DNA of 64,000 nt, taken from assembly GCA_004431415.1 (NCBI GenBank), contig QPMI01000106.1, positions 248,001-312,000 of the forward strand. The letters are read 5' to 3'. A program made the position numbers and the translations under genes. Below are positions 1 to 51,653 of this stretch, piece after piece. How positions within the stretch are numbered: the first letter of the stretch is position 1; the number at the start of each line of letters is the position of its first letter. The DNA is from Cyanophora paradoxa CCMP329. Taxonomy: Eukaryota > Plantae > Glaucophyta. The notes under the pieces were generated by a model. That model ran no database searches and had not been told where the DNA came from. It saw only the letters and a list, made by a program, of their open reading frames with translations.

Positions 1-182
1 CGCTATTTCTGCGCCTCGAGCTCGCGCAGCTAATTATAAGGATCGGCGCTCGAGAGCGCGGGCACCGCAGCGAAGGTCGGGAATTTGAGGGCGTCGTCGA
101 TCTCGCCGCCCGCGGCGCCGGCGCCGGAGGCCGCATCGTCGGATGGCGGCGGTAGGACCCAGTAAGTGCGCGCGCGCAGCAT
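1..182 (-). CDS. First exon of a tandem paralogue of the BTB gene at 850-4735 (runs off the window edge)
   Basis: ATG at 182 encodes MLRARTYWVLPPPSDDAA...EIDDALKFPTFAAVP, near-identical to the exon starting at 4735. Confidence 0.6.
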
Positions 183-780
183 CGCGTGGTCGCCGGGCGC
201 CCGATCGTTCGGAATTAATATTCGCGCTCCGGATGCTCTCTCTATAGCTACAAGCTCGTGGCGCCCACAGCCGCTCGCGATCGATTGAGCAAATTTCGCG
301 GCTGTCGCGAAAATCGCAAGTTCTCGTAGCTCAAATGGTTAGAGCGCCTCGAAGCTCTGGGCGATGCTCTTCGGATCGAGACCGGGTTCGAACCCGGGTT
401 CGGACCCGAGCGAGCCCCGAAGAGTTGAAAACAGTCACGAGATGATCCGGGTTCGACTCCCGGCGAGAACATCTTGCTGCCAAAGCTGCGTCTTCGAAGT
501 TGTCTTGAAAATCGTGATTTAATGATTCCTGGCGGGGTGCCCTGGCGCATCCGATGATCGCAATGACGCCGAGTCGATATCGATTCAATCGATATCGCGG
601 TAAAACACGTGCACCGTGCACGGCGCTTGCAACTGCGCGGACATGAATAATTGAAAACTATGCATTGAATCGCAAAACCGCATTAATATTCTATGCATCA
701 TTATAATTATTATTAAATCGCGCAGTACTTGGTTTTGCGTAGTTTCGCGAACTTGTTTAGCTTCGAAATTCGCCGGCGCC
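11..780. repeat. Diverged direct duplicate of 4568-5165 (tandem unit of about 4.5 kb: BTB gene start plus tRNA-like gene)
   Basis: Shared sequence such as gctaattataaggatcggc...cgaaggtcgggaatttgag...aaatcgcaagttctcgtagctcaaatgg...gtttcgcgaacttg in both places. Confidence 0.9.
320..471 (+). ncRNA. tRNA-like RNA gene (152 nt) with anticodon arm replaced by a long stem-loop; no assignable anticodon
   Basis: Perfect 7-bp acceptor stem GTTCTCG/CGAGAAC plus discriminator A, D-arm GCTC-AAATGGTTA-GAGC (A box), T-arm CCGGG-TTCGACT-CCCGG (B box). The central region contains stem CTCTTCGG/CCGAAGAG and extra GGTTCGAACCC hairpins. Confidence 0.7.
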
Positions 781-3800: not shown

Positions 3801-4735
3801 CTGGGGCTCGCGATCGAGGTTCCCCAGTTCCAATTGTGCGGCCTTGGGCTGCCGGGCTCGACACGTATTGCACCTTAAGCTTTCGAAGCCTTCGTGCACG
3901 GATGAGCTGAGCTCAAGGCGGCCTTGAACACGAGCGTACCCGTGGATTCGGGGAGCGCCGGCGCCAGGCCTAGGTCTGGCCCCGGGGAGCTCGATGTACA
4001 TGTGGCAAAGACCCCAGCGGAGCCCTGCCCGTCCACCACGCAGTTCTCGAAGCGGCTGTCGATTTCGATCAGGACCAGCGCCGATTTTATAATTAATTAG
4101 GACCAGCGCGAAATTTCTCAGAGGCGCCGGCGGCTGAGCATGCGGCTACCAGGTGACGCCACCGCCAGCAAGATGCGTGGAGCCGCGAAGCTCCAAGTCT
4201 CGGAACGTGACCTTGGCCTGGGCTCGGATAAAATTAATTCAGAGAAAGACCGCGCTTCGCAGCTGTATAGAGCGCGCACGGAGCTCCCGCGGACGACGAA
4301 GAGGACGCGCGACGACGAGTCGAGTGTCGGCTGCAAAATGGTCGAATTTGTGGGATCTCCAGCGATCGTGAGCTCGAGTTCGCGCTCAAGAGCGCGTTTT
4401 GCGACCTGCGCAGATCCGGAGCGCATGATTATCATCAATATCGGATGCATACATCTGCGCACCTGCAGCGTCGTGCGCTTCGGAAAGACATGCAAGCCCG
4501 AGAGCACGCGGATCTCGACCTTGTCGCAGCGGTCCCGCTGCGCTTGACTCCAGGCCTGCGCAATTCGCGCCTCGCGAAGCTAATTATAAGGATCGGCCCT
4601 CGAGAGCGTGGGCACCGCGGCGAAGGTCGGGAATTTGAGAGCGTCGTCGATCTCGCCGCCGGCGCCGGCGCCGGCGCCGGCGGCCGCGTCGTCGGATGGC
4701 GGCGGTAGGACCCAGTACGTGCGCGCGCGCAGCAT
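850..4735 (-). pseudogene. Multi-exon BTB/POZ-BACK domain gene, probably decayed (3' end approximate)
   Basis: Exons give PPDVTLRV (~2400), VDLRVHSAVL (~2210), SEYFRAVLSSGMRES (~1945-1990), VHGFDLDTVRSFLRFCY(MC)TG (~1720-1790) and AIEALVLAEQEACQPLRALAL (~1330-1390), the BTB-BACK order. Palindromic insertions and an apparent stop/frameshift near 3875. Confidence 0.7.
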
Positions 4736-5165
4736 CGTGTGGTCGCCGGGCGCTCGATCGCTCGGAATTCGCGCTCCGGATGCTCTGATCGAATTTCGCG
4801 GCTGCCGCAAAAATCGCAAGTTCTCGTAGCTCAAATGGTTAGAGCGCCTCAAAGATCTGGGCGATTTCCCAGGGGGGAAACCTGGTCACGAGATGACGCA
4901 GGTTCGATCCCTGAGGTTTGAAAACAGTCGCGAGATGATCCGGGTTCGACTCCCGGCGAGAACAGTGCGTCTTCTATTCCCGGCGGGGCGCACCCCACGC
5001 GCGGCCGGCGGCGATCAAAATCGGCGCCCACGAGGCCGGCTGCGTCCATCCGATGATCGCAATTGCGCTCATTCAAAATGACTGAATCGATGTAAAACGA
5101 GTTGAACTGCCGCAGTGCGTGGTTTCGCGAACTTGGAAGTTGGTTTCGCGCTCGCCGCCGAATTT
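4568..5165. repeat. Second copy of the duplicated segment at 11-780
   Basis: Direct alignment by eye with 11-780. Confidence 0.9.
4820..4964 (+). ncRNA. tRNA-like RNA gene (145 nt), second copy with a different central insert
   Basis: Acceptor, D and T arms are identical to 320-471. The insert contains a second tRNA-3'-half-like segment, GTCACGAGATGACGCAGGTTCGATCCCTG. Confidence 0.7.
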
Positions 5166-6371
5166 CGCGCTACTGCGGCGGCGGCGGTGGTAGGATCCAG
5201 TATGCAAGCGCGCGCAGCATCGCGTGCACGGGGTCTCGGGGCGCCGAAGGCTTCCAATCGGCGATCCGTAGACTATAGACGTCGCGATCAAATGATCAAA
5301 TTTTGCGGCGCCGGCTAATTTCGCGGCGCCGAGTTTTTCGCGGGAGCTCGAGGGGCGTGGAATCTGTTAGAGGCGGGGAGTGGAGGGGAGGGAAAGGGAG
5401 GGGCGTGGAAGGGAGGGAATTCGAATTCGAAGGGGAGGGGAGCGGAGGGGACTCCGGGAGGGAAGGTGAGGGGAGGGGAGGGGAGCTCGAGGCCCTATAG
5501 CTAGGTGAGGGGAGAAAGGGAAGGAGGGGAGGGGGGAGATAGGGGGGAATTATCAAAAGGAGGAGAGGAGAGATCTGATCGAATTGGATTCCCGCCACAA
5601 AATCGAGAGGAGCTTCTGCAGCTGCAACCTTGAGCTTCTGCAAGAAATTATCAAAAGGAAGAGAGATTAGTCATCTCGAGCTCGCGATCGCAATATATTC
5701 TCGCTACAAAATCTTTCCGGGATTCCAGGCTGGCCGCATTGAGATCTAGAGTTCGAGGCATTTTTAATATTAAAAGAAGGAGAGAGAGATCTGTAAAGGC
5801 CGGAGGTTCTCTAACAAATTGGTTCTCTAGATCGCGCAATATTCCGAAAGTTCCCGCCACAAAATCGCGACTTCTGCAGCCGGGTTTCCGGGCCGCACGC
5901 ACCGGCGCCGGCCGCGCGCCTATATACCAGGCTTCCAGGTGCGAGGTTCGGGCCACTTCTTCGCGCGGCAACTCGCTTTCGTCGCCCTAGGCTCGAAATG
6001 TGCATTTGAACGCCGCTCGCCGCCTCCTGAGCCGTTCCCAGCTGCAGGCGGATCTGCAGGAACTTTCCTAGACAAATTCACAGACGAGACGAGGAGAATC
6101 GTGAGGAGATATCGATCGTCTTCTTGCTAGGCGGGTTTCACAATTTACCGAATTCGCGCTCGCCATTAGTTCGCGTATTCGAATTAAAATGCGCTCCCAA
6201 CGCGTCACAGCTGCAGGGGCGATATCGATTGGAATTGCTGGGCGCGACCTCGAGAGCGATTTGATCTCACTTGGTCGGTTCCCGCGCGCATTAAAAGATT
6301 TTCGATAACGTTGGTTCGATCATTCTCTCGACTCGTGATCAGCGAGCGCTCATATGCGCATGCGCAGAAAA

Positions 6372-9300
6372 ATGGCGTCGGCTTCGAGTTCGACTTCGAA
6401 TTCAAATTCGCAAAAAAGAAGTGCGGACAGCGCATTCGGCGACATCGCACACGCGACAGTGGAGTTGCTCAGCAATATAAAGAGTCTATTGAAGTGCCCG
6501 GGGTGCTTGGAGGATTTCAACATGTACAACAAAGGAAACGTTCCTCGTCAGTTGCCAGCCTGCGAACACGCCCTGTGAGTCCGCTTAATATAATTTGCGC
6601 GTGCACTCTACATAGCATCTTGATTCAATCCCTTGATCACGATATTGATTCAGGTGCTCTTCATGTCTGGATGCGCGTGCGTTAACGTTATTCGAATTTT
6701 TTCTTCTCGGTGTTATCGTCGCAATTGATTAAACTGCAATAAATGTGTGCCGCGGCCGGCAGTGCGCAACCCGGAGGCCCACACAGTGGTCTGTCCGTCG
6801 TGCACAGAGGAGTCGACTGTTTCCGCAGTACAGGACATTCCTCTCTGTCTTTCGCTGGCCAGGAACGCCGAATTCGTCGGCAAATACGAGAAGGCCTTGA
6901 AAATGATGAGGTGCAGCAACTGCGAAGACAACGGCGTTCCTGCTGAGGCCTACTGCGCGGACTGCAACATGTATTTCTGCAAGTCCTGCTCCGATAAAGT
7001 TCACGAGGTCAACCTTGCTATAAACTTAATAAAGAATATCCTCCTTTTCGTATTGATGCTCCTTTTGTATTAAATTTGCAGCCCAAGGCATTGCATTTTC
7101 ACAACGTGCAGCGTTGCAAGTACGGCATCCCGGCACATACTTCGGCGCCCCTCCGCTCGATGTTTTTCTGCCCCGCCCACCCACAAGCGGTGGTCTCGCT
7201 CCTCTATTGCACCGAGATGCGGGCCGAGGTTCAAAGCTGCCCTGAATGGTGCGTGTAATTCCAATGTGCACGTGTAATATATCTAGATCTCCCCTATATT
7301 GCAGTTGTATTTAATTTCGCGTTTGATGCAGCGGTCCTGGGCTTGGAGATCTGCATCTGGGCCATCACCACGTGTGCCTCGCGGAAGGCGCCTCGCTTCT
7401 GCGAAAGCGGCTTGCGGAAGAGAATGCGAAGTACGAGGAGATGCTCTCGAAATTGGCGATCCGTGTCCGGGAGCTGTCGTACTACATTGGGGAGGCGCGC
7501 CGCAGTGCCGACATTTCAATTGAGAATTGTCGGCGGCGAATCGTGCAGGTGTGTACAATTGATGTCACATGCAATTAAATTTCATTTAGCGTATGCTATT
7601 AAATTCAAGCTCATGATCATGACTATAGCTTCTAAGCTAATAATCAAGCTTGTTATTTTGAAATTATATTTGCACAGATTCAGGCTGTACTGCAAGATGC
7701 ATTCGACGAAAGACTCACGGAAATCAAGAATCGAGCTTTCTTCATGTCTCGGCAGACCGATGAGCTTCGCTTCGCGAACGCCGACCTGCGGAAGACTGCG
7801 GCAGAAGGCAAGTCCGCGTTTCTCTCGGCTTTCAAGGACGCCGCCCACGCCGAGTACGAAAAGGTGTCCGTTTAATTTGGAGCCGTTTCATTAAAGAGAA
7901 GCTCATCGGGATTCCACGTCGTCGAACAGGTTCGGGCCGAAATCGACGACGCTCAAAACACATTGATTTCTCTCATCCATCAGAAAGCGAATGTCGCGAT
8001 GCGAATGCTCGAACAGCAGCTTACCATCACCAAATCTTCACAGTCAGAGCTCCAGAACATGAACCCGATATCGATGGACCGCATCGAGTTTCTTTGTGAT
8101 TATTTGACACCGGCCATCCAGATTATCCGCATGCAGGTTCTTATATACCTCGAATGTTAGATAATTAATATTACCCGTCCGACTGTCAGGATATCGATGC
8201 TGCGCAGGATTCGTTTCTCGCTCCTTTTATTGCAATTGCTCGAAAGCTCGGGGAGGCTGAGCAGCTCCTGCAACACAAAGTTGAAGTGACCCGCGTCCTG
8301 TTCAATCCAGCGGCAGTCGACATTCGGGAGATCGATCTTGGCGGACTTCGGGATCGACTGCGGCTGCGCACGACCGTGAACAGAGAGAGCGCCGTGTCCT
8401 GCATCAACGGAGACAGCGCAGTTGTGGCCAAACTCTCAATCGACTGGCGGCAGAACCTTCCAAAGGAAGCGGCATATTTGCCCGGCGCCGAGGAAGCGGT
8501 TTTCTTCTCCGAAGTTTTCAGCTGCGACGGCTTCCCGTGGAAGCTGCGAATCCACCCGACTGGCGCCCTCTCGGGAAGGGGGACCCACCTCTCGCTCTTC
8601 CTGCTCCCGGCTGTTGACTTGCCCAAGGTCAATGGCATTCTCTCTTTAATTTAGATAATCTCTTTATAATCTCGTTGACTCGCTTTGATTTCGCAGGGGG
8701 TGGGTATCCGCGCGACTTTCTCCGTTGTCTTTCCTCCAACCGGTCTCTTGGATTCAGCTTCATCGTCGCCTGCCGGCATTTCTTTCGGACCGAAGGACGG
8801 CTACTGGACAGCTGCGAACAGCCACGGCTGCGGCTGGAACGAAACGATTTCCTTGCAGAGCGTCCGAATTCCGGTGCGACTTTAATTTAATTATAATCAG
8901 CTCCGCTAACGTATGCATCCTCGCGATTGAAACAGAAGACGAACGGGAATTCAAAGCTGAATGTCCATGTACGAATCGAGAACGCAACCTTGCTGGGCAC
9001 TCGATCAAATGAGTGATGATGTGTTCCCATGTGAGGCCCATGGCCAGCCGGCGCCGCGGCCGCGCAGCCCATCGTGACCATTCTGATTTTCGTGATCATC
9101 CTCGCAACCGTAGTCTAGATCTAGAACCATGTGCATCGATTTAACCATCAACGCTTTTGAATAAAAGGTTTCGGAGTTTTGCGGATGGTATTTGCGTTGC
9201 AGCTATAGCTAGCTATAGTCGATAGATATGCATATGCTGTGCACGTACTACGGTACGCAATAAACCTATCTTTCTGCCCTCTCACCTTTGCAATTGAACG

Positions 9301-17206: not shown

Positions 17207-20200
17207 TCAGCCCTTGAGCTTCTGGAGGTAGTTGATGACGCTCGTGGCGCGCATGATGTCGTTGAACGTGTCGGCGACCTTCTCCTGCGCCGTCCGCTCC
17301 GGGATCGAGATCGCCACCGAGTCGTCCGGCGGCTGGTACTTGTACCTGCGCGCCCGGATTCGAACGGCGCAAGCTTTAGACGTAGACGCGGTTCGCCGCG
17401 GCGCACCCGGGGTCGGTGAGGGGCAGGCGCTTCGGAATGCCCTCGTTCTTCTGCCCGCCGAAGCCCAGCTGCCCGCTCGAGCCGTTGCCCCACCCGTACA
17501 GCTGGCCCCCGTCTGCGGCCCGCGCCCCGCCCCTCAGCCGCCGCGCAGCGCGCGCCCGACCGGCAGCGCCGCCGCGGCCGCACCGGAGACGAGCATCGAG
17601 TGGCCGCCGCCGGAGCTGACGGCCGCCGCCGCCACGTCCTTCAGCGTCGTGAGGCGCGTCGGCTTGTACAGGTTCTGCGTCTTCCCGTTCCCCAGCCCCC
17701 TGCGGCGCCGGCGCGCCTCAGGAGAGGAAGGAGCGGGGTCGCAGAGCGGGGCGGGGCCCCACCCGAAGACGCCGCTGCCCCAGACGTAGGACGTGCCGCC
17801 GTCTGCGCGGCGTGAGGCGGGGCGGGGCGGCCCGGGCTCGGGGTGCGGGGCGCGGGGCCGGGGCGGACCGGAGAGGGCCATGCATATGTAGTGGCCGGCG
17901 GCGACGGAGCTGACGTGGACCTTGGCGAGGGCCTCCACGCGGCGCGGGGCCGTCGCCGCCTCCGCCGCCTCGCTCGAGCCGCCCTTGCCGTGGCCCAGCT
18001 GCCCGGGGGCCCCCACCCCCCACGTGAAGACCTCCCCCTGGTCTGCGCAGCACTCAGAAGACGAAGAAGAAGGGAGAGCAGGCGCGGGCACCGGAGGCGG
18101 CGACGAAGCAGCGGGAGCCGCAGGCGAGGGAGGCGGCGCGGGCGCCGCCGGGGAGCTCGACGCGGGCGAGCTGGACGCGCTCGGTGGCGGCGGCGAGCTG
18201 GATGCCGGCCTGGCTGCCCCGCCGGCTCCGCGAGAGCGTCGCCTTGATCGCTTTCAACGCCGCCGACGTCACGTTCGACCCGCGCCGCGGCAGCGCGTCC
18301 TTGCCCGAGGGGCTCCCCGGCGCCGCCAGCGCCCGCGGCGTCGGGCTCGCCGCCGCCGCCGCGAACGCCGCCAGCGCCGCCGCCGACGCCGCCGGCTTCG
18401 CAGCCGCCCACGACTCCTGTGGAGGCGTCAGACGCGCGGGAGGGAAGGGATGGGGGGAGGAAGGGAGGGGGGTACCAGCTCCTCCTCGCGGAAGGCGACG
18501 CGGCTGCTCCAGATCCAGACTTGGCCGTCGGCCGTCAGCACGGCGATCGAGGCGGCGCCGCAGGAGACGTGCGTCGGCCGCGGCGGGCTCGCCTCCACCG
18601 GCGCCGGCTCCATCTGCGTCGCCCCGCCCTCCACGCGGCCCCACGCCCACACCTCCCCGTCCGCTGCCGCACGTCAAGAGAAAGAGAATGAGAAGAAGAC
18701 AAGGGGGCGCACCCGTGATGGCGGCGGTGTGGGCGGAGCCGAGGGCGACGGCGGTGACGCGCTTCTCGGAGATGGGGCCCCGCTCGAGGGGCACGGGGAC
18801 CTCGACGTCCTCGCAGTGGCCGAGGCCCAGGCAGCCGTACAGGTTGGAGCCCCAGACGAAGAGGCGGCCGGCCTCCGTCAGCGCCGCCGCGTGCTGCCCG
18901 CCGGCCGCCACCCGCACCACGCGCTGCTCCCAGAGCGACCGCAGCGGCTGCGGCTCCAGCCGCAGCTCCCGCACCCCCGTACCCAGGCCCAGCTGCGGGG
19001 CGCGGTCTCAGGGCGCGGACGGACGCGCGTGGTGCCGGGGGCCGGGGGCGCCGCACCGCGCCGAACTCGCCGTTGCCCCAGGACCAGACCTCGCCCGTGT
19101 CCGTGAGGGCCAGCGTGAACGCCAGGCCGCAGGCCACAGAGACGACCCGCTTGTGCGCCCGCGCCGCCGTCGGCCTGTCCGGCGATAAGGAGGCGGAGGG
19201 GAGAAGGAAGGGGGTAGAGGGAGGGAAGGCGGACCAGTACCCCGCGACGGGGACGAGGGGGGACGAGACGAGGCCCAGCTGGCCCTGGGCGCCCAGGCCG
19301 AACGAGTAGAGCCTACCCGTCACTGAGAAAAGGGGGGGAGGGGGGTGAGCCGGGGTACAGGAGAAGAAGCGGCCGGGGGTACCGGTGGCGGCGAAGGAGT
19401 GGGAGCCGCCGGCGGTGACGAAGACGACGCCCTTGCCGCTCAGGCGCTCCACTCTCCTCGGCTCGTACGCCACCTGCGGGGGGTACGCTCGACAAAGCGG
19501 AAGGGGGGGGGGAAAGAACGAAAGAGGGGGTAGCGCACCGTCCAGGAGCCGACGCCGAGCTCGCCGTGCTGGCCCCGCCCGAACGCGTACACGTGCCGAT
19601 CCGCTACCCCCCCGAGGCTCGGCGCCGGAGGGGAAAGAGGGGGGGGGAAGAGCGGAAGGGGGATACCGACGAGGACAAGGGTGTGGTAGGCCCCCGCGGC
19701 GACGGAGGTCACCTGCTTGCCCTCCAGGGCGCCCCCCACGGGCCGGGGTACAAGCTGGCTCGCCTCTGTACCCAGCCCCGTGGCCCCGTAGCTCCCCTGG
19801 CCCCACGTGTAGCACTTCCCCGCCACTGCGCCCCCGCCGCCCCGCGTCGGAACAGCACGCGCAAGGGGAACGGGGGCGCGGCGACCGGCGCCGGGGCTCA
19901 CCCGAGTGGGCGACGGTGTGCTGGGAGCCGCAGGCGATGCCGGCGATGTGTACCCCCGCGAGGGCCTCGACGCGGGCCGGCTCGTCCTTGTTTCCGGTGG
20001 TACCCAGGCCGAGCTGGCCGTACTCGCCGTTGCCCCAGGCCCACACCGAGCCGTCGTCTGGCCGGGGCCGGGCCTCAGGGTCGGCGGGGCGGCGGGGGGC
20101 GGGCGGGGGCGCACGGGCGAGGGCGACGGAGTGGGCGGAGCCGCAGGCGACGGCGCGGATGCCGACGTTGGCGGCGCCGTAGGGCATCGACACGGGCACC

Positions 20201-22086
20201 AGCTCGTGCGCGAACCGCTGCGCCGGCGGGCTCTGGGACCGGCGAAGAAGACGACGGATCAGCAGCGGGCGGGGCGGGGCGGGGCGGGGAGGGGATGAAG
20301 AAAGGGGCCGCGCACGGAGCCGACTCCGAGCTGCCCGCACGAGTGCTGCCCCGCCGCGTAGATCTGCGGGGTACGTGGGCGGGCAGCGGGGGCTCTTCGG
20401 GAAGGGTACAGCACCTTCCCGGAGCGCGTGAGGAAGAGGCTGTGGCGCTCGCCGAGGGCGGCGCCGGCGGCCGGCTCGGCGTCGGGCAGGGCGAGGCGCC
20501 TGGGCATGGGCTCCTCGCCGTGGCCCAGGAAGCCCAGCTGGCCGTACGCGTTGTGGCCCCAGACGAGGAGCTCGCCCACGTCGGTCACGGCCGCCGAGTG
20601 CTGCGCCCCGGCCGCCGCCACCCGCACCCGCCGCTTCTCGAGCTCGCCGCGGACGCGCTTGGGCGCGCCGTCGGTGGCGTACTCGCCGGCGCCGAGCTGG
20701 CCGTGCACATCCAGGCCGCAGGCGAAGAGCGCGCCCTCGTCGGTGACCAGCAGCGAGTGGAAGCGCCCGGCCGCCGCCGAGACGACGCGCGTGCCCTCCA
20801 GGAAGTCGACGGCGCAGGGCTTCGCCTGGTTCTCCCGGTCCTCGGTCGCCGAGTGCGCCGAGCCCGTCATTGAGTTCACGAAGTAGCCGCTCGCATCCTC
20901 GCCCCACGCCGCGCGGTAGGACTTGCGCCCGAAGGTCGACGGCGGAGGCAGGCGCTGCGGCCGCTCCATCGAGCGCCCCACGATGTAGCGCTGCGTGTGG
21001 TGCTCGATCGCCGCCGACACGGGCGGCGTTTTCGTCCGGGGCTTGACGCTCATGTACTGCAGCTCCCCGCTGCGGTGCGGCGGAGCCGGGGGCGGGCTTT
21101 AGAAAGGTCGCGGGCGGGCGCGCCGGGCGGGCGCCGGAGCGGGCGGACCTCGCGGAGAGGGGCCGGCGGCTCTCGACCCAGCGCTTCACGTCGCCGCGGA
21201 GCCCGTCGAGGCTCGCCGCGGGGGACCGATCCTCCCGTTGCGCTGCGCGGCCGGCGCGTCGGGCCGGGCGCACGCGGCGCGGCGCGGCGGAGGCGGAGGC
21301 GGAGGAGGGGCGCACCGCTTCGCGTGCGCGCCTCTTCGCGCGCCGCCTCAGACTCCGTCGGCACGTACGGGATCACGGGGTACGACCCGTCGAGTACCGC
21401 ACGCGCTCGCCCCGCGCCGACCCGGGCCGCTTGGCCCGCCTGGCCCCGCCGCGCTTCGGAGAGGTTGGGCTCCGCGATCCGGGGCGCCCGGGCGACGTCC
21501 GCGTCGCGTCCCGGGCGGGGCCGCCATCCGCCGCGCCCGCGTCGCCCGGCGCCGGACTCTCCTTCCCGCGCGCGGCTCGGCTGGAGGTCGGGGGCGGCCG
21601 GCTGAAGTCCAGCTTCAGCTTGGGCTCCGCTTTGGGCGGCGGAGGGGCCTGGGGCCGGGCGGCTGCGGTGCTGGAGGGGCTGACGTGGGCGGGGGCGGAC
21701 GCTGCGGCGGAGGCGGATCCTGCGGTTGCTGATGCGGGCGAGGAGGGAGTGGAGGGGAAAGAGATCGGGCGGGATGCTGTGACGGATGAGGGGGGCGTCG
21801 ACGCTGCGCTTGGGCTGGGCTCCGCAACGACAGTGGGGGCGGGCGGGCTGGGCGGCGGCCTGAGCGCCGGCTTGAGCGCCGGCTTCAAAGGCGCGCGCCC
21901 CTGAGGCGTCACCGGCCGCTCCGGCTCCTGCACCGTGGCCGGAGCGGGCGCTGGGGCGTCCGGGGTGCCGGCAGCTGGGCCTGTGCCCGTCGGACTTCGG
22001 GAAGGCCCAGCGCTCGTGGGGCGCGGGGGCAGCCCGGACGACGAAGACCTCGGAGAGATCATCGGCGCTGGGCTTTGCGCCGACAT
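17207..22086 (-). CDS. RCC1-repeat (RLD beta-propeller) protein with Pro/Ser-rich N-terminus; many short introns
   Basis: Many RCC1 blades: AAGRFHSLLVTDEGALFACGLDVHGQLG, AAGAQHSAAVTDVGELLVWGHNAYGQLG, ACGSAHSVAL..DGSVWAWGNGEYGQLG, AAGGQHAAALTEAGRLFVWGSNLYGCLG, GEVFTWGVGAPGQLG. ATG 22086, TGA 17209-17207. Confidence 0.9.
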
Positions 22087-30644: not shown

Positions 30645-32032
30645 ATGCCTTGCTTCGCCGGTATCCTCAAGAGCCTGCAGCGGGCGACGGCCGTCGTCGA
30701 CCGCACCTGCAGCCTAGCCCTCGACAGTTTCGTCGACGTCGTCGAGAAACTGTTCGGGCAAGCACCAAAGCCGCAGCCGCAGCCGCAGCCGCAGCCGAAG
30801 CAGCCGCAGCCCGACTCCGACTCCGAGCCCGAGGTGAGCGACAGCGGCTCGGAGTCGGAGTCCCGGAGTGAGGTGCGCGCGCGTTGCGTCCCTTTTCCAC
30901 TTCAGTAAAACTCGCCTGATCATGACGCCGGCCGCCTCCTCGTCCGCAGACTCTGGTGAAGATCTCAACAGACGTCGACGAGGTGTGTGCACGCGAACGC
31001 CTACGTATACGCGCGCGCGCATGCGCGCGCTAGCGCTGCCGCTAAAGCTTTACACATATATTTATATTTCAGGCGTATACGTATACGTATACGTAATATT
31101 GATACGTAAACGTCGTTATAAAATACTTACACTTCAAAGACTTGTACGTACGCGTACGTATACGTATACGTAATAATTATACGCGTACGTATACGTATAC
31201 GTCGACGTCGTTAAACAATACGTATACGTACACTTGTACATACGTACGCGTATACGTATACGTATTCGTATATATATATATAAACGTATCGACCGGACCG
31301 CCGCTGCAGCTGACGCGCACTTCTCCTTTTTCGTTGCGCAGCTGCAGCTGCAGGACAATTCAGCGGACAGCGATGTGGAGGTGTGTGTTGCACGTTGCAA
31401 TTGCGCTGCGCTACTAGCAGCGCTAGCTATAGCCCTTTCTCGCGTTTTTTCGCTGACGTCGATCCGTCCGCGTATATCAGATCACAGCTGCAGCTCCGGC
31501 CGCGGCCGAGGATCCAGCGATCGACGACGCAGCTGCAGCCCCGACCACAGCAGCAGCTGCAGCGCCGGCGCCGGCCGCGGATGCAGCTGCAGCAGTCAAC
31601 GACGTCGACGCAGCAGCGGCCCCGGCCTCAGCAGCTGCAGCGCCAGCGCCGGCGCCGGCCGCGGATCCTGCAGCCGAAGAGTGCAGCCAGCGGCCGGTCC
31701 TCTACGGGATGATGACGAATATTAATATTGATTCGAAGCTGCAGCGGGGCTCCCGGCTCCCCAAGCCCGTCAGCCCCGAGATGGCAGCCCTTAGGGGCGC
31801 CTTCCTAGCCGTCGGCAACAACTCCAGCGATGTCGACGAGTCCGGCATGCGCGTGCGCAGCTGGTGCAACTGGCACGGCGCCGTAGCGGTGGAGCTGGCC
31901 TGCCAGATTGCAGCCATGCCATCAGCGCCGCGGCCGGGGCGGCTCAGCAAGCCCAGCTCGGCAGCCTCCTGCAGCAACGCGGCGCAAGAGCTGGCATGCG
32001 TCCTCGCAGCCATCCGGACAGCTGCAGCCTGA
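30645..32032 (+). CDS. Hypothetical, probably decayed multi-exon gene
   Basis: ATG 30645 exon MPCFAGILKSLQRATAVVDRTCSLALDSFVDVVEKLFG ending at a GT donor; final coding-like exon 31740-32032; no recognisable domain. Confidence 0.35.
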
Positions 32033-32067
32033 GGCCCCGGCCCAACCCAGCGAGCAGCTGCAGCCTC

Positions 32068-33212
32068 TGGCCGCTGAAGCTCGCTCCTCCATCGGGGCGG
32101 GCGGATTTGGTCTCTTGTTTGGCCTCTGAAGCCTGCTCCTCCATCGGGGCGGGCGGATTTGGTCTTGTTTTGGCCTCTGAAGTTTGCTCCTGCTTCGGAG
32201 CAAGCGGATTTGGTCTTGTTTTGGCCTCTGAAGCTCGTCCCTTCTTCGGGGCGAGCGGATTTGGTCTTGTTTGGCCTCTGAAGCTCGTCCCTTCTTCGGG
32301 TCGAGCGGATTTGGTCTTGTTTGGCCTCTGAAGCCCGTCCCTTCTTCGGGTCGAGCGGATTTGGTCTTGTTTTGGCCTCTGAAGCTCGTCCCTTCTTCGG
32401 GGCGGGCGGATTTGGTCTTGTTTGGCCTCTGAAGCTCGTCCCTTCTTCGGGGCGGGCGGATTTGGTCTTGTTTGGCCTCTGAAGCTCGTCTCTTCTTCGG
32501 GGCGGGCGGATTTGGTCTTGTTTGGCCTCTGAAGCTCGTCCCTTCTTCGGGGCGGGCGGATTTGGTCTTGTTTGGCCTCTGAAGCTCGTCCCTTCTTCGG
32601 GGCGGGCGGATTTGGTCTTGTTTGGCCTCTGAAGCTCGTCCCTTCTTCGGGGCGGGCGGATTTGGTCTTGTTTGGCCTCTGAAGCTCGTCCCTTCTTCGG
32701 GGCGGGCGGATTTGGTCTTGTTTGGCCTCTGAAGCTCGTCCCTTCTTCGGGGCGGGCGGATTTGGTCTTGTTTGGCCTCTGAAGCCCGCCCCTCCATCGG
32801 GGCGGGCGGATTTGGTCTTGTTTGGCCTCTGAAGCTCGTCCCTTCTTCGGGTCGAGCGGATTTGGGCTTGTTGCAATTGGGCCTCTGAAGCTCGTCCCTT
32901 CTTCGGGGCGGGCGGATTTGGTCTTGTTGGGCCTCTGAAGCTCGTCCCTTCTTCGGGGCGGGCGGATTTGGTCTTGTTTGGCCTCTGAAGCTCGTCCCTT
33001 CTTCGGGTCGAGCGGATTTGGTCTTGTTTGGCCTCTGAAGCTCGTCCCTTCTTCGGGGCGGGCGGATTTGGTCTTGTTGGGCCTCTGAAGCTCGTCCCTT
33101 CTTCGGGGCGGGCGGATTTGGTCTTGTTTGGCCTCTGAAGCCCGCCCCTCCATCGGGGCGAGTGAATTTGGTCTCATTTTCTGCTGAAAGCTCGCCCCTC
33201 CGTCGGGGCGGG
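32068..33212. repeat. Minisatellite, about 23 copies of a 50-bp unit
   Basis: Unit gaagctcgtcccttcttcggggcgggcggatttggtcttgtttggcctct repeated head-to-tail with few variants. Confidence 0.97.
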
Positions 33213-33323
33213 CCGAGGCGTCGCTGAAGTGGTTTTTCGCCGCAACAGCGATTCTTTGCATGCCATGATGCCACTAAATTTTAATTGCAATAGTACCGGC
33301 CGCAGACACTAGATAATGACAGT

Positions 33324-46438: not shown

Positions 46439-48941
46439 TTGCGTTTTGAAATTTCGATGTTGCTGCAGATCCTTGCCATGGCCAGCCGTAGTGTTTCGGC
46501 TGCTGCAAGCCTTGTACAGTCTCCTTCTGCGCCGCCAGCCTGGCGGCCGCTAGTCGCGCGGCCCGGCCCCGTCGCTTGTTCCCGTGATTATGACTAGAGC
46601 CCCAGCCCCTGGCCCCAACCTTTAAGATGCGTGTGGCATGCAGGTCCAAGATCAGGCAGAGTTCGAGGAGTAGGAATACCAGCTGCAGGTCGATTTGGAT
46701 TTGCGAAGGCGTAGAACCACTTTTGAGCTTATAATTAGCTATAGATCTAAAACTTCGAGAGACAGCTGTTTGAGCTTCTATCAAGGACTTCGAAAGACAG
46801 ATCTAGCTGTAGAGCTCAAGTGCAGTTTCAGCTCGGAGATCTAGACTAGCTATATAGTTGTAGATAGCCCCAGACCGTAGCACCTAGATACCGATACCGA
46901 TACCGATACCGCCGGGAAGATGCATCGAAGCTAGCGAGCTTCGAGGCTCCAGATCCCCTATTGCGACCGCGGCCGCGCGGAATCGAACCCAATCATTTTG
47001 GCACGTGTCAGGGCCTGAATTCGAAGCCTCGGACGTTGACGCAGAGCCTCTAAATAAAATCGCGAGAATAGCCTCGCGACCCCCTCCTCCCCTCGAACCG
47101 CAGCTGCAGGGCTTGGAGCAAGAATTAAATTGCGGTAATCCGAAGTTCGGATCATCGGGTTTTCCGAGTACTAGTTTGCAATTGGAAATTAAATGTAAAC
47201 CGGTACCGTGGTTTTCAAAACCTCACCCGGTCCAAAACAAGCCAATTAATTGCAACTTCCTTAATTCGAAGGTGAACGCTTAAAGGGAGTCTTTGGCAAG
47301 ATCTAGAGCTGAGGCGTGCAACGACTCTCAGTCCTTGACTATGGCTCACTGAGTCAGTAACTCATGATCAGTGACTTGTGCTTGGCGGGCTCCGCCCGCC
47401 GGCCTACCAATTTTTTACAATGAACTCCTGCCTAAGTCTATATATTCTGAGCGTTCGGCCGCGGCGGCGAAATAGCACGAGAGGGATCGCATAAATCTGA
47501 GAGGAGCGAGGGGGCCTCTCCTCTTCCCCATTATCCCTCTCATCCCTCTCAGCTCCATCCCGGAGGCGTACGCGGCGTGCCCCGGGCCCGCCGGCGCGGC
47601 CGTCGCCCCCGCCCCGGCCCCCGCCCGCCCATGGCCAGCTGCAGGCCCCAGCTCGCGCCTCATGATCAGGTGCCCGCGAGGCGGCACGCCCCTCCCCGCC
47701 CATACTGCGCGCCCCTCTCACCGGCGCAGCAGGGAGCTATATATATGCCGATTGAGGCACGAGGAAGTCTGGTCCCCAATCCCTGCATCCCCTCCCCCTC
47801 CCGCCGGGGCGCGACTTCGCCCTCTTCCCCCCCTCCCCCCCCCTTCAAACCCCCCCTCCTCCCCCTTCAACCCCCCCCCCTTCTCCTCCCCCCTTCAAAC
47901 CCCTACGGATCCTGCCCCGCCCCCCTCCCCCCTCCGTCCATCGCCAACCCCGTCGCTCCAGACCGTCGTTGCGCGGCGCGGGCTGCTCGGCCCTACGATC
48001 GTGAGCTCGCGGACGTCGACCCTACGTATACGGCCCGGGCACCGTCTGAAGATTGACGCGGTGGACGGCGTGCGCCCCCGGCCACGCCAGGGGCTAATTC
48101 ATCGACATCGATCTCATGCTGATGCGATGATGGGCTATAGGGGATCTGGAGCCTCGGAGCTCGCTAGCTTCGATGCATCTTCCCGGCGGTATCGGTATCG
48201 GTATCGGTATCTAGGCGCTACGGTCTGGGGCTATCTACAACTATATAGCTAGTCTAGATCTCCGAGCTGAAACTGCACTTGAGCTCTACAGCTAGATCTG
48301 TCTTTCGAAGTCCTTGATAGAAGCTCAAACAGCTGTCTCTCGAAGTTTTAGATCTATAGCTAATTATAAGCTCAAAAGTGGTTCTACGCCTTCGCAAATC
48401 CAAATCGACCTGCAGCTGGTATTCCTACTCCTCGAACTCTGCCTGATCTTGGACCTGCATGCCACACGCATCTTAAAGGGGGGCCAGGGGCTGGGGCTCT
48501 AGTCATAATCACGGGAACAAGCGACGGGGCCGGGCCGCGCGACTAGCGGCCGCCAGGCTGGCGCAGAAGGAGACTGTACAAGGCTTGCAGCAGCCGAAAC
48601 ACTACGGCTGGCCATATGCATGGCAAGGATCTGCAGCAACATCGAAATTTCAAAACGCAATTGAAAGCACTAAATACCCCTGATACAGAGAACATCCCAG
48701 CAAAGAGCAACGAAAGCTGAACATCACAGAGTCGACGGAACGACTAGAGCCGGACGCTGTGCACTGTGCATCGCTGTACAAAGACTAGAGCAGCTGCGAA
48801 AATTCGAAGCTGAGCTGCGAAATCCGGAGCTAGAGCTGCATGGGGAAACTGTCTCGCGAAATCTAAGACATGAATTGGCTTGGAGCAAGCGAATCGTCGA
48901 CAAAGGTCTGCAAATGGAAAGCAAAGAGGCGAAGAGATCCT

Positions 48942-50438: not shown

Positions 50439-51653
50439 TTATACAGACGGAGGCACAAACCCCGCGGCCGGCGACGCCTCCGCAGGAGCTCCATAGTCGT
50501 CGCTTCTGCTGGAGCTCCGCAGTCGTCGCCTGCGAACAGCGAGCTGTGAGCCGCGGCCGGGGAGGAGCGGCCGGCGGCGGAGGCGCACGGCCCGAAGGGC
50601 GGGCCCCGGGGGACGCACTATAGCTACGGCAGCGCCGCTGGATGCCGCCGACGAAACGGAGCCCCCTGGGGAGAGGGAAGGGGAGAAGGAGGGGACGGGG
50701 GCGGCGTGGGAGCTCGCGGCTGCCGGCGCCGCGGCTTCGATGCCGGCGGCGGGCACCAGTGGCTCGCCCAGGCCGCCGGGGGGAGGCGGCGAGGCTGAGC
50801 CCGCAGCCGCAGAGACGGCCGCGGGCTGGGCGCTGGATGCTGCCGACGAGGCGGCGGGGGCGACGGAGGGGACTGGGGCGGGGGCGGGGGCGGGGGCGCA
50901 GAAGAAACTCGAGGCGGCTGCAGCTGGCGCCGCGACAACGCCGGAGTCGTGTCCAGCTCCTGGAGGCCATGCAGGGGGCGTGGACGTCCAGAGGGCGCGG
51001 GCAATTCGCCTCCGAAGCTGCTGGCACTGGGCCCCCGTTCCGGTGAACGGGTGGGCTGGGTGGTTGAGGATGGAGCGCTCCTCCCCGTGCATGATGCGCT
51101 CCACGATCGTGCAGACGAAGACGCCGCAGCTGAAGCCGTCTACCTGCTCGGGAATGTCGCGCTTGGGGCGCGCCAGCTCGCAGGTCCACGTCTCCACCTC
51201 CGGGTCAGGCAAATTCTTGAACTTGCAGTGGTCCGACACGAAACGCTTCAGGGTGCGCAGGACTTCTTCCTGTCGCTGGTCGTAGTTGAGGAGGAGGCCG
51301 TCGTAGTGCTGGAACAGCCGCTGTTTCGGGCGGATGACGGCCAGGGTCCAGTGCGTGTTGCCGTGATTCACGACGACAAAGATGCGATCGTACTGGAACA
51401 TGTTCTTCACGTATTTCCAGAACTTCATTATTTTATAGCCGTGAGAAGGCCAATTCAACTGCGAGTAAAAGGTGGTAGGGCAGATGAAGAAATCGAAGCG
51501 ACCGGAGCCGCGACAGGCAAGTTTCAGAAGGCGAAGGTAGACTTCGATGGCCGCGCCGGTGAGCCATTTCTCGTCCAGAACACTGTCGATGTCTCGTTGC
51601 GACACCTGCATTGCGCCGGCGCCCTGAGAGGTCGAGGTGGGCGTCATGATCAT
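50439..51653 (-). CDS. Ulp1/SENP-family (peptidase C48) SUMO protease domain fused to the gene V linker
   Basis: WLTGAAIEVYL, FFICPTTFYSQL, YDRIFVVVNHGNTHWTLAVI (His), QHYDGL (Asp), IPEQVDGFSCGVFV (Gln, Cys); catalytic residues intact and the domain is uninterrupted by introns. Confidence 0.92.
   Translation of the reverse strand: MIMTPTSTSQGAGAMQVSQRDIDSVLDEKWLTGAAIEVYLRLLKLACRGSGRFDFFICPTTFYSQLNWPSHGYKIMKFWKYVKNMFQYDRIFVVVNHGNTHWTLAVIRPKQRLFQHYDGLLLNYDQRQEEVLRTLKRFVSDHCKFKNLPDPEVETWTCELARPKRDIPEQVDGFSCGVFVCTIVERIMHGEERSILNHPAHPFTGTGAQCQQLRRRIARALWTSTPPAWPPGAGHDSGVVAAPAAAASSFFCAPAPAPAPVPSVAPAASSAASSAQPAAVSAAAGSASPPPPGGLGEPLVPAAGIEAAAPAAASSHAAPVPSFSPSLSPGGSVSSAASSGAAVAIVRPPGPALRAVRLRRRPLLPGRGSQLAVRRRRLRSSSRSDDYGAPAEASPAAGFVPPSV

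What the first reader, a model, noticed from the sequence alone, without database searches (positions are those of the whole stretch)
320..471. tRNA-shaped RNA with the anticodon arm replaced by a long variable hairpin domain
Seen: perfect acceptor, D and T arms identical in two copies (320-471, 4820-4964), while the flanks have diverged. A conserved core CCTC(G/A)AAG(C/A)TCTGGGCGAT...TTGAAAACAGTC(A/G)CGAGATGAT can pair CTCG/CGAG and CTG/CAG around a purine-rich internal loop. Between these lie unrelated 50-60 nt inserts that both fold back. Removing a canonical 37/38 intron gives no U33 and different triplets in the two copies (GCT vs GAT). Inference: a natural tRNA-scaffold ncRNA family transcribed by Pol III (tRNA mimic or carrier of a variable RNA domain), or a tRNA with non-canonical multiple introns.
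Basis: partly seen in the sequence, partly recalled or inferred. Interest (0 to 1): 0.8.

Follow-up and report, generated by a model that had tools for sequence, protein, structure and literature searches.

The report
tRNA-derived gene pair lacking an anticodon
Two neighbouring copies of a tRNA-derived gene keep a perfect tRNA body. Where the anticodon should be they carry about 80 bases made of a decayed second copy of the gene's own 3' part plus palindromic insertions, so they cannot decode, and whether they are still used is suggested but not shown.

Summary
Copies at 320-471 and 4820-4964 share an identical tRNA body (64/64 bases). Copy 1 scores 44.7 bits on the Rfam tRNA model with 86 extra bases in the anticodon loop.

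- **Duplication.** The copies lie in a local segmental duplication.
- **Inserts are related.** Each holds a decayed direct copy of the gene's own anticodon-stem 3' strand, variable loop and T arm. Copy 1 also carries a 6-mer X-revcomp(X)-X scar of the kind that fills this genome.
- **No decoding tRNA.** No single excision gives a 5-bp stem with U33 and a purine at 37 in either copy. Copy 2 has no two-intron solution either, and the copies share no bulge-helix-bulge site.
- **Constraint.** The outer body has not changed while flank, core and inner copy have (Fisher p about 0.02). This suggests constraint, from one pair only.
- **Expression.** Untested: no RNA-run contig covers the genes.

Most likely this is a non-decoding tRNA-derived Pol III unit that is still under selection. 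A young pseudogene pair is the main rival. An earlier unchecked note of this scan (s1-512738) describes a similar set of four genes elsewhere in the same genome.

The parts
320..471 (+). Copy 1 of the tRNA-derived gene (152 nt)
   Evidence: Rfam RF00005 scores 44.7 bits, E 1.3e-8, model positions 1-71, with 86 nt inside the anticodon loop. Sequence read. DNA run X1 holds 93% of its sampled words.
4820..4964 (+). Copy 2 of the tRNA-derived gene (145 nt)
   Evidence: Body identical to copy 1. Not found full-length by Rfam. DNA-run contigs cover 4660-4839 and 4810-5304 with no differences.
320..349 (+). 5' body of copy 1: acceptor 5' strand, D arm with A-box-like TAGCTCAAATGG (327-338), start of the anticodon stem. 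Copy 2 equivalent is 4820-4849.
   Evidence: 30/30 identical between the copies. The match to the A-box consensus TRGCNNAGTGG rests on my own knowledge.
438..471 (+). Outer 3' body of copy 1: CGAGA, 4-nt variable loop, T arm with B box GGTTCGACTCC (450-460), acceptor 3' strand, discriminator A, no encoded CCA. Copy 2 equivalent is 4931-4964.
   Evidence: 34/34 identical between the copies. The inner copies of the same sequence differ by 4-5 substitutions and 6-10 gap columns.
352..437 (+). 86-nt insert of copy 1 between CCTCG (347-351) and CGAGA (438-442)
   Evidence: Rfam alignment shows *[86]*. MFE of 351-437 is -39.2 kcal/mol, in the 2.7% tail of same-G+C stretches of this window.
4852..4930 (+). 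79-nt insert of copy 2 between CCTCA (4847-4851) and CGAGA (4931-4935)
   Evidence: MFE of 4851-4930 is -28.9 kcal/mol, in the 5.7% tail.
377..397 (+). Inner decayed copy of the 3' part in copy 1 (CGAGA, variable loop lost, CCGGGTTCGA-ACCCGG)
   Evidence: Local alignment to the outer 3' part. 2.2% of dinucleotide shuffles score as well.
4885..4911 (+). Inner decayed copy of the 3' part in copy 2 (GTCACGAGATGACGCAGGTTCGA-TCCC)
   Evidence: 23/27 identical to the outer GTCGCGAGATGATCCGGGTTCGACTCCC. 0 of 2000 shuffles reach the score.
384..401 (+). 6-mer inverted triplication GGGTTC-GAACCC-GGGTTC inside the insert of copy 1
   Evidence: The window holds 15 such 6-mer cases against 0 in shuffles.
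366..425 (+). Long hairpin of copy 1, arms GCTCTTCGG (366-374) and CCGAAGAGT (417-425)
   Evidence: Folds.
20..319 (.). Upstream block duplicated with the gene (copy 2 equivalent about 4570-4819). It includes AAAATCGCAA directly before the gene (310-319) and a divergent 50-aa ORF (30-182, minus strand).
   Evidence: 230 matches and 17 mismatches. ORF comparison.

Best explanation
Origin (well supported, about 0.85). A class-I tRNA gene first suffered an internal direct duplication of its 3' part: anticodon-stem 3' strand, variable loop, T arm and probably part of the acceptor strand. Prokaryotic tRNAs sharing its acceptor stem and the start of its D arm are mostly tRNA-Arg. After the duplication the 5' half pairs with the outer 3' part, and the inner copy is looped out where the anticodon loop used to be. 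A local segmental duplication then made two copies 4.5 kb apart. Since then the looped-out part has been reshaped by indels and by the X-revcomp(X)-X insertions typical of this genome, which is why it folds into hairpins.

Present state (inferred, about 0.5). The gene can no longer give a decoding tRNA, but its tRNA body is still under selection. The most likely mechanism is that the intact A and B boxes still drive RNA polymerase III. The perfect acceptor/T elbow then lets RNase P, RNase Z and the CCA-adding enzyme treat the transcript like a tRNA. The product would be a tRNA-shaped RNA of about 150 nt with a long, freely evolving arm in place of the anticodon arm. What that RNA does is unknown. 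Transcription and processing are inferred, not shown.
For: - **tRNA body.** Rfam tRNA 44.7 bits for copy 1. The stems are perfect and the cloverleaf-constrained fold equals the free fold.
- **Internal duplication.** In copy 2 the inner copy is 23/27 identical to the outer 3' part, and 0 of 2000 shuffles reach the score. Copy 1 has the same element at the same place (2.2% of shuffles).
- **Palindromic remodelling.** Copy 1 holds GGGTTC-GAACCC-GGGTTC. The window holds 607 3-mer inverted triplications against about 34 in shuffles. A dated example, ATT to ATT-AAT-ATT, distinguishes the two flanks.
- **Segmental duplication.** The upstream 300 nt are 90-93% identical, and the duplication continues beyond the window start.
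- **Non-decoding.** No one-intron solution in either copy and no two-intron solution in copy 2. No shared bulge-helix-bulge site. ARAGORN with introns gives discordant Phe/Leu calls with poor stems.
- **Constraint.** Body 0/64 changes against 17/247 in the flank, 3/29 in the core and 4-5 in 23-27 positions of the inner copy. Fisher p is 0.028, 0.019 pooled, and 0.014-0.022 for the inner-copy control.
- **Gene context fits a Pol III tRNA-type unit.** A CAA triplet lies directly upstream in both copies, 7-8 T lie in the first 25 nt downstream, and no CCA is encoded. The review PMC13578239 describes CAA triplets at -10 to -3 as Pol III enhancers in land plants and yeast, weaker in algae, and reports about 8 T per 25 nt for algal tRNA genes.
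- **Arg-type acceptor.** 117 of 130 prokaryotic and metagenomic tRNAs with the same acceptor stem, D-arm start and A73 are tRNA-Arg.
Against: - There is only one pair of sequences, so the constraint test is weak (p about 0.01-0.03). It also assumes the flank evolves neutrally.
- No RNA evidence exists. Contigs of the two laid runs guessed to be RNA do not cover the genes, and those runs may not capture small RNAs.
- No run of four or more T lies within 260 nt (copy 1) or 336 nt (copy 2) downstream.
- Copy 2 has lost a pair of the anticodon stem (A at 4851 opposite C at 4931), and its best fold closes the arm with a different partner than copy 1.
- The core is no better conserved than the flank.
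- The parent isotype is not certain. The Arg assignment rests on prokaryotic tRNAs, and the D loop lacks the A20 that the best-matching prokaryotic tRNA-Arg genes fetched here carry in their D loop (GGATAGAGC).
Confidence: 0.5

Rival explanations
1. These are young, functionless pseudogenes. A tRNA gene was killed by the internal duplication and then copied by the segmental duplication. The identical body is chance, or is kept by gene conversion from intact members of the parent tRNA family.
For: - There is no usable anticodon arm.
- The anticodon stem is weakened in copy 2, and the two copies fold differently.
- The core evolves at the flank rate.
- No RNA contigs cover the genes, and no T4 terminator lies nearby.
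- A possible decayed relic lies at 46935-46995.
- The genome makes hairpins everywhere.
Against: - 0/64 changes in the body against 7-10% in the flank and core, and about 17-19% plus indels in the inner copy of the same sequence.
- Two separate conversion tracts of about 30 nt that stop exactly at the borders of the tRNA halves are unlikely (inference).
- An earlier, unchecked note (s1-512738) reports the same pattern in four other genes.
Confidence: 0.3
2. The element works at the DNA level only. The A and B boxes are kept as a TFIIIC/Pol III site that is part of a two-way promoter or boundary for the divergent gene upstream. The precedent is the companion tRNA or tRNA-like genes of trypanosome small-RNA genes. 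The RNA itself does not matter.
For: - A short ORF runs the other way, with its ATG 137 nt upstream. It is duplicated with the gene and shows 5 synonymous against 3 non-synonymous changes plus an in-frame indel.
- The upstream block has few indels, whereas the downstream flank differs mainly by indels.
- An earlier unchecked note (s1-636747) describes tRNA/mRNA divergent promoter modules in this genome.
- The trypanosome precedent is cited in PMC13578239 (Nakaar et al. 1994).
Against: - The 41 body positions outside the two boxes are also unchanged. The chance of that is about 1-5% at the flank rate (my arithmetic).
- Both strands of the acceptor stem stay complementary.
- No RNA contigs lie on the divergent ORF.
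Confidence: 0.12
3. It is a real pre-tRNA with one or more unusual introns that is spliced to a decoding tRNA. One candidate in copy 1 is a tRNA-Arg(UCG) built from the internal CUUCGGA-UCGAG.
For: - Copy 1 contains CUUCGGA followed by UCGAG, which could pair with CUCGA at 348-352.
- The acceptor stem is Arg-type.
Against: - That reading needs an extra base between the D and anticodon stems plus two introns without bulge-helix-bulge motifs.
- It is absent from copy 2, which has no solution at all.
- CUUCGGA is simply the 5' arm of a 9-bp inverted repeat with CCGAAGAG.
- The literature reports only canonical introns, in three isoacceptor families, for Cyanophora paradoxa (PMC13578239).
Confidence: 0.05
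4. The two copies are the tRNA-derived parts of a mobile element, either the two LTRs of a non-autonomous LTR element (Helenus/Cassandra type) or SINE copies.
For: - Two direct repeats of at least 650 bp lie 4.5 kb apart, each holding the tRNA-like gene.
Against: - Identity along the repeat is very uneven: 98% far upstream, 90% upstream, and alignable downstream only as short identical islands between indels (51% in the MAFFT alignment). An LTR pair would not look like this.
- No TGG-type primer site follows the repeat end near 606.
- There are no long ORFs between the copies.
- The flanks are homologous, so the copies are not independent retrocopies, and there is no tail.
Confidence: 0.03

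Closest known systems
tRNA-like sequences and tRNA pseudogenes of nuclear genomes (the 'tRNA-like' class of PlantRNA 2.0, bioRxiv 10.1101/2021.12.21.473619)
   Same: It derives from a tRNA gene, keeps A and B boxes and most of the cloverleaf, and cannot decode. PlantRNA states that this class mixes true pseudogenes with divergent molecules of unknown function.
   Different: The defect is not scattered decay. It is a self-derived insert (a second copy of the 3' part) confined to the anticodon region, while the rest is unchanged between the paralogues.
Intron-containing tRNA genes with long structured introns (O. tauri about 64 nt; tricRNA-producing animal tRNA introns; multi-intron genes of Cyanidioschyzon merolae)
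   Same: A long, hairpin-forming stretch interrupts the anticodon region of an otherwise normal tRNA gene.
   Different: No excision restores a 5-bp stem with a 7-nt loop carrying U33 and R37, and the copies share no bulge-helix-bulge motif.
Engineered tRNA scaffolds, and natural tRNA-shaped non-decoders such as mascRNA or the bacterial YrlA Y RNAs
   Same: A tRNA elbow (acceptor/T plus D) is used without an anticodon function. In scaffolds the anticodon arm is replaced by a foreign hairpin.
   Different: Nothing shows that this RNA exists. It has normal tRNA topology, unlike the permuted YrlA (Rfam YrlA 15.8 bits against a cutoff of 69). The arm is decayed self-sequence, not a conserved cargo.
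Companion tRNA or tRNA-like genes that serve as promoter elements of divergent genes in trypanosomes (Nakaar et al. 1994, cited in PMC13578239)
   Same: A tRNA-type A/B-box unit lies head-to-head with another gene a short distance away.
   Different: The neighbour here is a putative short protein-coding ORF with no expression evidence, and the dependence is untested.
The four 'tRNA-Arg-derived genes with an inserted hairpin' noted earlier in this scan on another piece of the same genome (s1-512738, unchecked)
   Same: A tRNA body said to be strictly conserved, a hairpin of tens of bases in the anticodon arm, and a link to arginine tRNA.
   Different: I could not read those sequences, so I do not know whether they share this body or the internal 3'-part duplication.

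Membership tests
tRNA (Rfam RF00005) | Acceptor, D and T arms with the conserved elbow bases | tested here: met
   Model positions 1-71 align to copy 1 at 44.7 bits. Perfect 7/4/5-bp stems in both copies.
tRNA (Rfam RF00005) | Score at or above the gathering cutoff in a standard scan | tested here: inconclusive
   Nothing passes in the whole-window gathering scan. Copy 1 reaches 44.7 bits (cutoff 29) only with lax filters on 291 nt. Copy 2 gives only a 12.8-bit partial match.
Decoding tRNA | 5-bp anticodon stem and 7-nt loop with U33 and a purine at 37, directly or after intron removal | tested here: not met
   No single-excision solution in either copy. No two-excision solution in copy 2, and only contrived ones in copy 1.
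Eukaryotic canonical intron-containing tRNA | [quoted passage not shown] | tested here: not met
   Excision there leaves AAGCUCA in copy 1 and AAGAUCG in copy 2: A33 and different triplets.
tRNA with archaeal or C. merolae-type introns | Bulge-helix-bulge motif at the exon-intron borders | tested here: not met
   My own scan (4-bp central helix, 3-nt bulges, flanking helices) finds only scattered relaxed hits. None is shared by the copies at borders that would restore an anticodon arm.
RNA polymerase III type 2 gene | Internal A and B boxes | tested here: met
   TAGCTCAAATGG at 327-338 and GGTTCGACTCC at 450-460, identical in copy 2. The consensus is from my own knowledge.
RNA polymerase III type 2 gene | Oligo-T terminator just downstream | tested here: not met
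   The first run of four T lies 262 nt (copy 1) and 337 nt (copy 2) downstream. There are 8 and 7 scattered T in the first 25 nt.
RNA polymerase III type 2 gene | Transcribed by Pol III | not testable with these tools
   All listed runs are held only as contigs. In the two guessed-RNA runs laid (X4, X7) no contig lies on the genes.
tRNA-derived SINE | Independent insertions with target-site duplications and a 3' tail | tested here: not met
   The two copies share homologous flanks on both sides, so this is a segmental duplication, and there is no tail.
LTR element with tRNA-derived LTRs (Helenus/Cassandra type) | Two LTRs of even divergence, with a primer-binding site after the 5' LTR | tested here: inconclusive
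   Identity runs from 98% and 90% upstream to short identical islands between indels downstream (51% in the MAFFT alignment). No TGG primer site follows the repeat end. The left end lies outside the window.
YrlA / Y RNA-like | Match to the Rfam model with permuted tRNA-like topology | tested here: not met
   RF02553 scores 15.8 bits against a cutoff of 69. RF01053 scores 21.9 against 80. The topology here is not permuted.
tRNA-Arg | Arg anticodon and Arg identity bases | tested here: inconclusive
   117/130 tRNAs with the same acceptor stem and D-arm start are Arg. All of those are prokaryotic or metagenomic, no anticodon survives here, and the D loop differs (GGTTAGAGC instead of GGATAGAGC).

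The most novel reading that the evidence does not exclude
The alga (reported by earlier notes as the glaucophyte Cyanophora paradoxa) maintains a lineage-specific family of Pol III genes. In these genes a strictly conserved tRNA body carries, in place of the anticodon arm, a long and fast-evolving hairpin, making a natural 'tRNA scaffold'. The elbow would recruit the tRNA processing, export and stability machinery for the hairpin, for example as a source of small or circular RNAs. The six genes seen so far (two here, four in s1-512738) would be its first members.
Probability: 0.15. Interest if true: 0.75.

Novelty: new variant of a known kind. Interest (0 to 1): 0.4.

Why it matters
If the unchanged body reflects selection, this would be a eukaryotic tRNA-shaped RNA kept for something other than decoding, with a clear origin story: self-duplication of the 3' part, then looping out. 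It would also show how a genome that constantly makes small palindromes grows hairpin domains inside non-coding genes. If the genes are only young pseudogenes, they still matter in two ways. They are a dated example of that mutational process. They are also a warning for tRNA annotation in this genome: Rfam scores copy 1 well above the tRNA cutoff although it cannot decode.

Tried and rejected
- **Finding more copies.**
  - The exact 27-mer of the 5' body gave no match in metagenome or prokaryote genome contigs.
  - A protein-level trick, using the antisense ORF 248-550 as query to fish out ORFs called over paralogues, found nothing.
  - The findings look-up by sequence was blank.
  - An exact-product look-up for ORF 31705-33261 was not on record.
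  - So no third copy could be read, and no covariation test was possible.
- **Expression.**
  - One run search and one read layout were available. The holders X1-X3 behave like low-coverage DNA runs. The contigs of the two laid runs guessed to be RNA (X4, X7) touch only a GCC/GGC low-complexity stretch at 4654-4696.
- **ARAGORN with introns.** It calls Phe(GAA) for copy 1 and Leu(GAG) for copy 2, with 3/5-pair stems and different intron positions. Rejected as inconsistent.
- **tRNA-Arg(UCG) reading of copy 1.** Rejected, see rivals.
- **Thr reading.** The loop-register triplets AGU (outer) and GGU (inner, copy 2) fit Thr. Rejected because position 33 is C in the outer copy and position 37 is C in all.
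- **Class II reading.** GUC(A/G)-CGAGA-UGAU could be a variable arm, and the A-to-G change keeps a pair. Rejected because no U-rich partner exists for an A-rich anticodon stem.
- **Compensatory change.** G351/C408 in copy 1 becoming A4851/U4912 in copy 2 was noted. It is a single event, and the same base also fits two other partners, so it does not count as evidence.
- **Relic at 46935-46995.** Too weak for blastn-short.
- **Spliced models.** Trial excisions were made only inside a script and checked against structural rules.

Full report
**What is there**

Two stretches on the plus strand, 320-471 (152 nt) and 4820-4964 (145 nt), begin with the same 27-mer and end with the same 21-mer. Each of these occurs exactly twice in the window, against none expected. 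Read as RNA, both have a 7-bp acceptor stem, a 4-bp D stem with a 9-nt loop (G18 G19 present), a 5-bp T stem with loop UUCGACU, discriminator A and no encoded CCA.

The Rfam tRNA model aligns copy 1 end to end at 44.7 bits (E 1.3e-8), with 86 nt where the 7-nt anticodon loop should be. This hit appears only with lax filters on a short stretch. The whole-window gathering scan finds nothing, default ARAGORN finds nothing, and copy 2 is not recovered full-length. Forcing the cloverleaf body costs 0.3 kcal/mol in copy 1 and nothing in copy 2. The tRNA shape is therefore real and far beyond chance.

**Setting**

Neighbouring ORFs carry eukaryotic-type domains: RCC1 repeats, Ulp1 protease, B-box and MATH. 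ORFs are fragmented and G+C is 55-74%. This fits a nuclear eukaryotic genome. Earlier notes of this scan name it Cyanophora paradoxa. I could not check that name myself.

**The copies are paralogues in a segmental duplication**

Alignment of 1-900 with 4500-5400 shows about 300 nt of upstream flank at 90-93% identity, with 17 mismatches in 247 well-aligned positions at 20-319. Downstream, short identical islands are separated by indels. A contig of a DNA run joins window position 1 to a 98% copy of 4460-4562, so the duplication continues beyond the window start. The same runs confirm both copies, so they are not assembly artefacts. The homologous flanks rule out independent SINE-like insertion. 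The very uneven identity along the repeat argues against an LTR pair.

**What is conserved and what is not**

| Region | Result |
|---|---|
| tRNA body (320-349, 438-471) | 64/64 identical |
| Middle 59 / 52 nt | 35% identical in a global alignment |

**The inserts are related**

- In copy 2, 4885-4911 (GTCACGAGATGACGCAGGTTCGA-TCCC) matches the outer 3' part (GTCGCGAGATGATCCGGGTTCGACTCCC) at 23 of 27 positions. None of 2000 dinucleotide shuffles reach that score.
- In copy 1, 377-397 (CGAGA, gap, CCGGGTTCGA-ACCCGG) is the same element at the same place. This match is weaker, reached by 2.2% of shuffles.
- The similarity seems to extend to the bases before CGAGA (GUCA) and perhaps to the acceptor strand.

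So before the two copies separated, the gene had duplicated its own 3' part in tandem. The 5' half now pairs with the outer copy, and the inner copy is looped out.

**Why the insert is a hairpin**

This window holds 607 three-base inverted triplications (X, reverse complement of X, X) against about 34 in shuffles, and 15 six-base ones against none. Copy 1 carries one at 384-401 (GGGTTC-GAACCC-GGGTTC), built from the inner T-arm copy. One 6-bp case (ATT to ATT-AAT-ATT, 214-222) distinguishes the two upstream flanks, so the process has acted since the duplication. The inserts fold better than most stretches of this window with the same G+C, but not extremely so (2.7% and 5.7% tails). The two copies also close the arm differently. 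Copy 1 uses CUCG/CGAG of the outer part plus CUG/CAG and a 9-bp stem at 366-374/417-425. Copy 2 uses GCCUCA/UGAGGU with the tail of the inner copy. I therefore read the hairpins as a product of the mutation process acting on unconstrained sequence, not as a conserved domain.

**Can it become a normal tRNA?**

- I enumerated every single excision that leaves a 5-bp stem (at least 4 pairs), a 7-nt loop with U33 and a purine at 37, and a 4-5-nt variable loop. There is none in either copy.
- With two excisions there is none in copy 2 and only contrived ones in copy 1.
- A scan for bulge-helix-bulge motifs gives scattered relaxed hits but none shared at useful borders.
- ARAGORN with introns gives Phe for one copy and Leu for the other, with poor stems.
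- The review PMC13578239 reports only canonical introns in three isoacceptor families for C. paradoxa.

The trial excisions were made inside a script only.

**Parent tRNA**

I fetched 130 tRNAs from metagenome and prokaryote genome contigs that share the acceptor stem, D-arm start and A73. Of these, 117 are tRNA-Arg. The evidence is indirect: it comes from prokaryotic tRNAs, the D loop differs, and the anticodon is lost. Some features (GCGCC at positions 24-28, loop-register triplets AGU/GGU) would also fit Thr. I leave the isotype open, with Arg as the likeliest.

**Is it still used?**

The only evidence is comparative.

- The body has 0 changes in 64 positions.
- The flank has 17 in 247, and the core 3 in 29.
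- The inner copy, which is the same sequence and so serves as an internal control for mutability, has 4-5 changes in 23-27 positions plus 6-10 gap columns.
- Fisher tests give p = 0.028 (body vs flank), 0.019 (pooled) and 0.014-0.022 (outer vs inner).

This is suggestive but rests on one pair. Gene conversion limited to two 30-nt blocks seems unlikely but cannot be excluded.

The gene context is compatible with a Pol III tRNA-type unit. The A and B boxes are intact, a CAA triplet lies right before the gene in both copies, and 7-8 T lie in the first 25 nt downstream. [quoted passage not shown] However, there is no run of four T for more than 260 nt. An unchecked note (s1-636802) says a tRNA-Leu gene of this genome also lacks an oligo-T. 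No RNA-run contig lies on either gene, but the runs are held as contigs and are probably not suited to small RNAs, so expression is untested.

**Divergent neighbour**

A 50-51-codon ORF on the minus strand (30-182 and 4580-4735) starts 137 nt upstream of each copy. It differs between the copies by 5 synonymous and 3 non-synonymous changes and one in-frame indel. This hints that the upstream block is a real 5' exon or promoter region. It keeps alive the idea that the tRNA-type unit is part of a two-way promoter, with precedents in trypanosome companion tRNA genes and in note s1-636747.

**Verdict**

The origin is well supported: a tRNA gene with an internal direct duplication of its 3' part, copied by a segmental duplication and then remodelled by palindromic indels.

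| Reading | Estimate |
|---|---|
| Non-decoding tRNA-shaped Pol III product, still under selection | about 0.5 |
| Young pseudogenes | about 0.3 |
| DNA-only promoter or boundary role | about 0.12 |
| Unusual pre-tRNA | about 0.05 |
| Part of a mobile element | about 0.03 |

It is best filed as a new variant of the known class of tRNA-like or tRNA-derived genes. The scan has seen a similar thing before on other DNA of this genome (s1-512738).

Noticed in passing
window 214-222 (against 4762-4777): A 6-bp inverted triplication, ATT to ATT-AAT-ATT, is present in the flank of copy 1 and absent from the flank of copy 2. It is a dated instance of the genome-wide X-revcomp(X)-X process. The window holds 607 three-base cases against about 34 in shuffles, and 15 six-base cases against 0.
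   Followed up: partly
window 30-182 (-) and 4580-4735 (-): A short divergent ORF of 50-51 aa (MLRARTYWVLPPPSDD...) has its ATG 137 nt upstream of each tRNA-like gene. The copies differ by 5 synonymous and 3 non-synonymous changes and one in-frame 3-nt indel. No RNA contigs lie on it.
   Followed up: partly
window 5183-5226 and 5291-5319: A third, partial copy of the upstream block (86% and 69% identity) lies about 480 nt after copy 2's block, with no tRNA-like gene behind it.
   Followed up: no
window 46935-46995 (-): A T-arm-like ATGATTGGGTTCGATTCC is followed about 30 nt later by GCCTCGAAGCTC, the same 12-mer as the 5' core of copy 1. It may be a decayed relic of a related gene, but it is too weak for blastn-short.
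   Followed up: partly
upstream of window position 1: A DNA-run contig joins window 1-350 through 19 other bases to a 98% copy of 4460-4562. The duplication therefore continues outside the window, and more copies may lie there.
   Followed up: no
window 575-597: A near-perfect 23-nt palindrome (CGATATCGATTCAATCGATATCG) lies about 105 nt downstream of copy 1. No run of four T follows either gene for more than 260 nt.
   Followed up: no
window 4654-4696: A GCC/GGC low-complexity stretch attracts many unrelated contigs of the runs guessed to be RNA. This gives a false depth peak (125-158) in the read layout.
   Followed up: yes
window 18538-21315 (-), 50442-51653 (-), 6747-7070 (+), 8286-8651 (+): Neighbouring ORFs carry RCC1 repeats, a Ulp1 (C48) protease domain, a B-box zinc finger and a MATH domain. 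These are eukaryotic-type genes, apparently with introns.
   Followed up: partly
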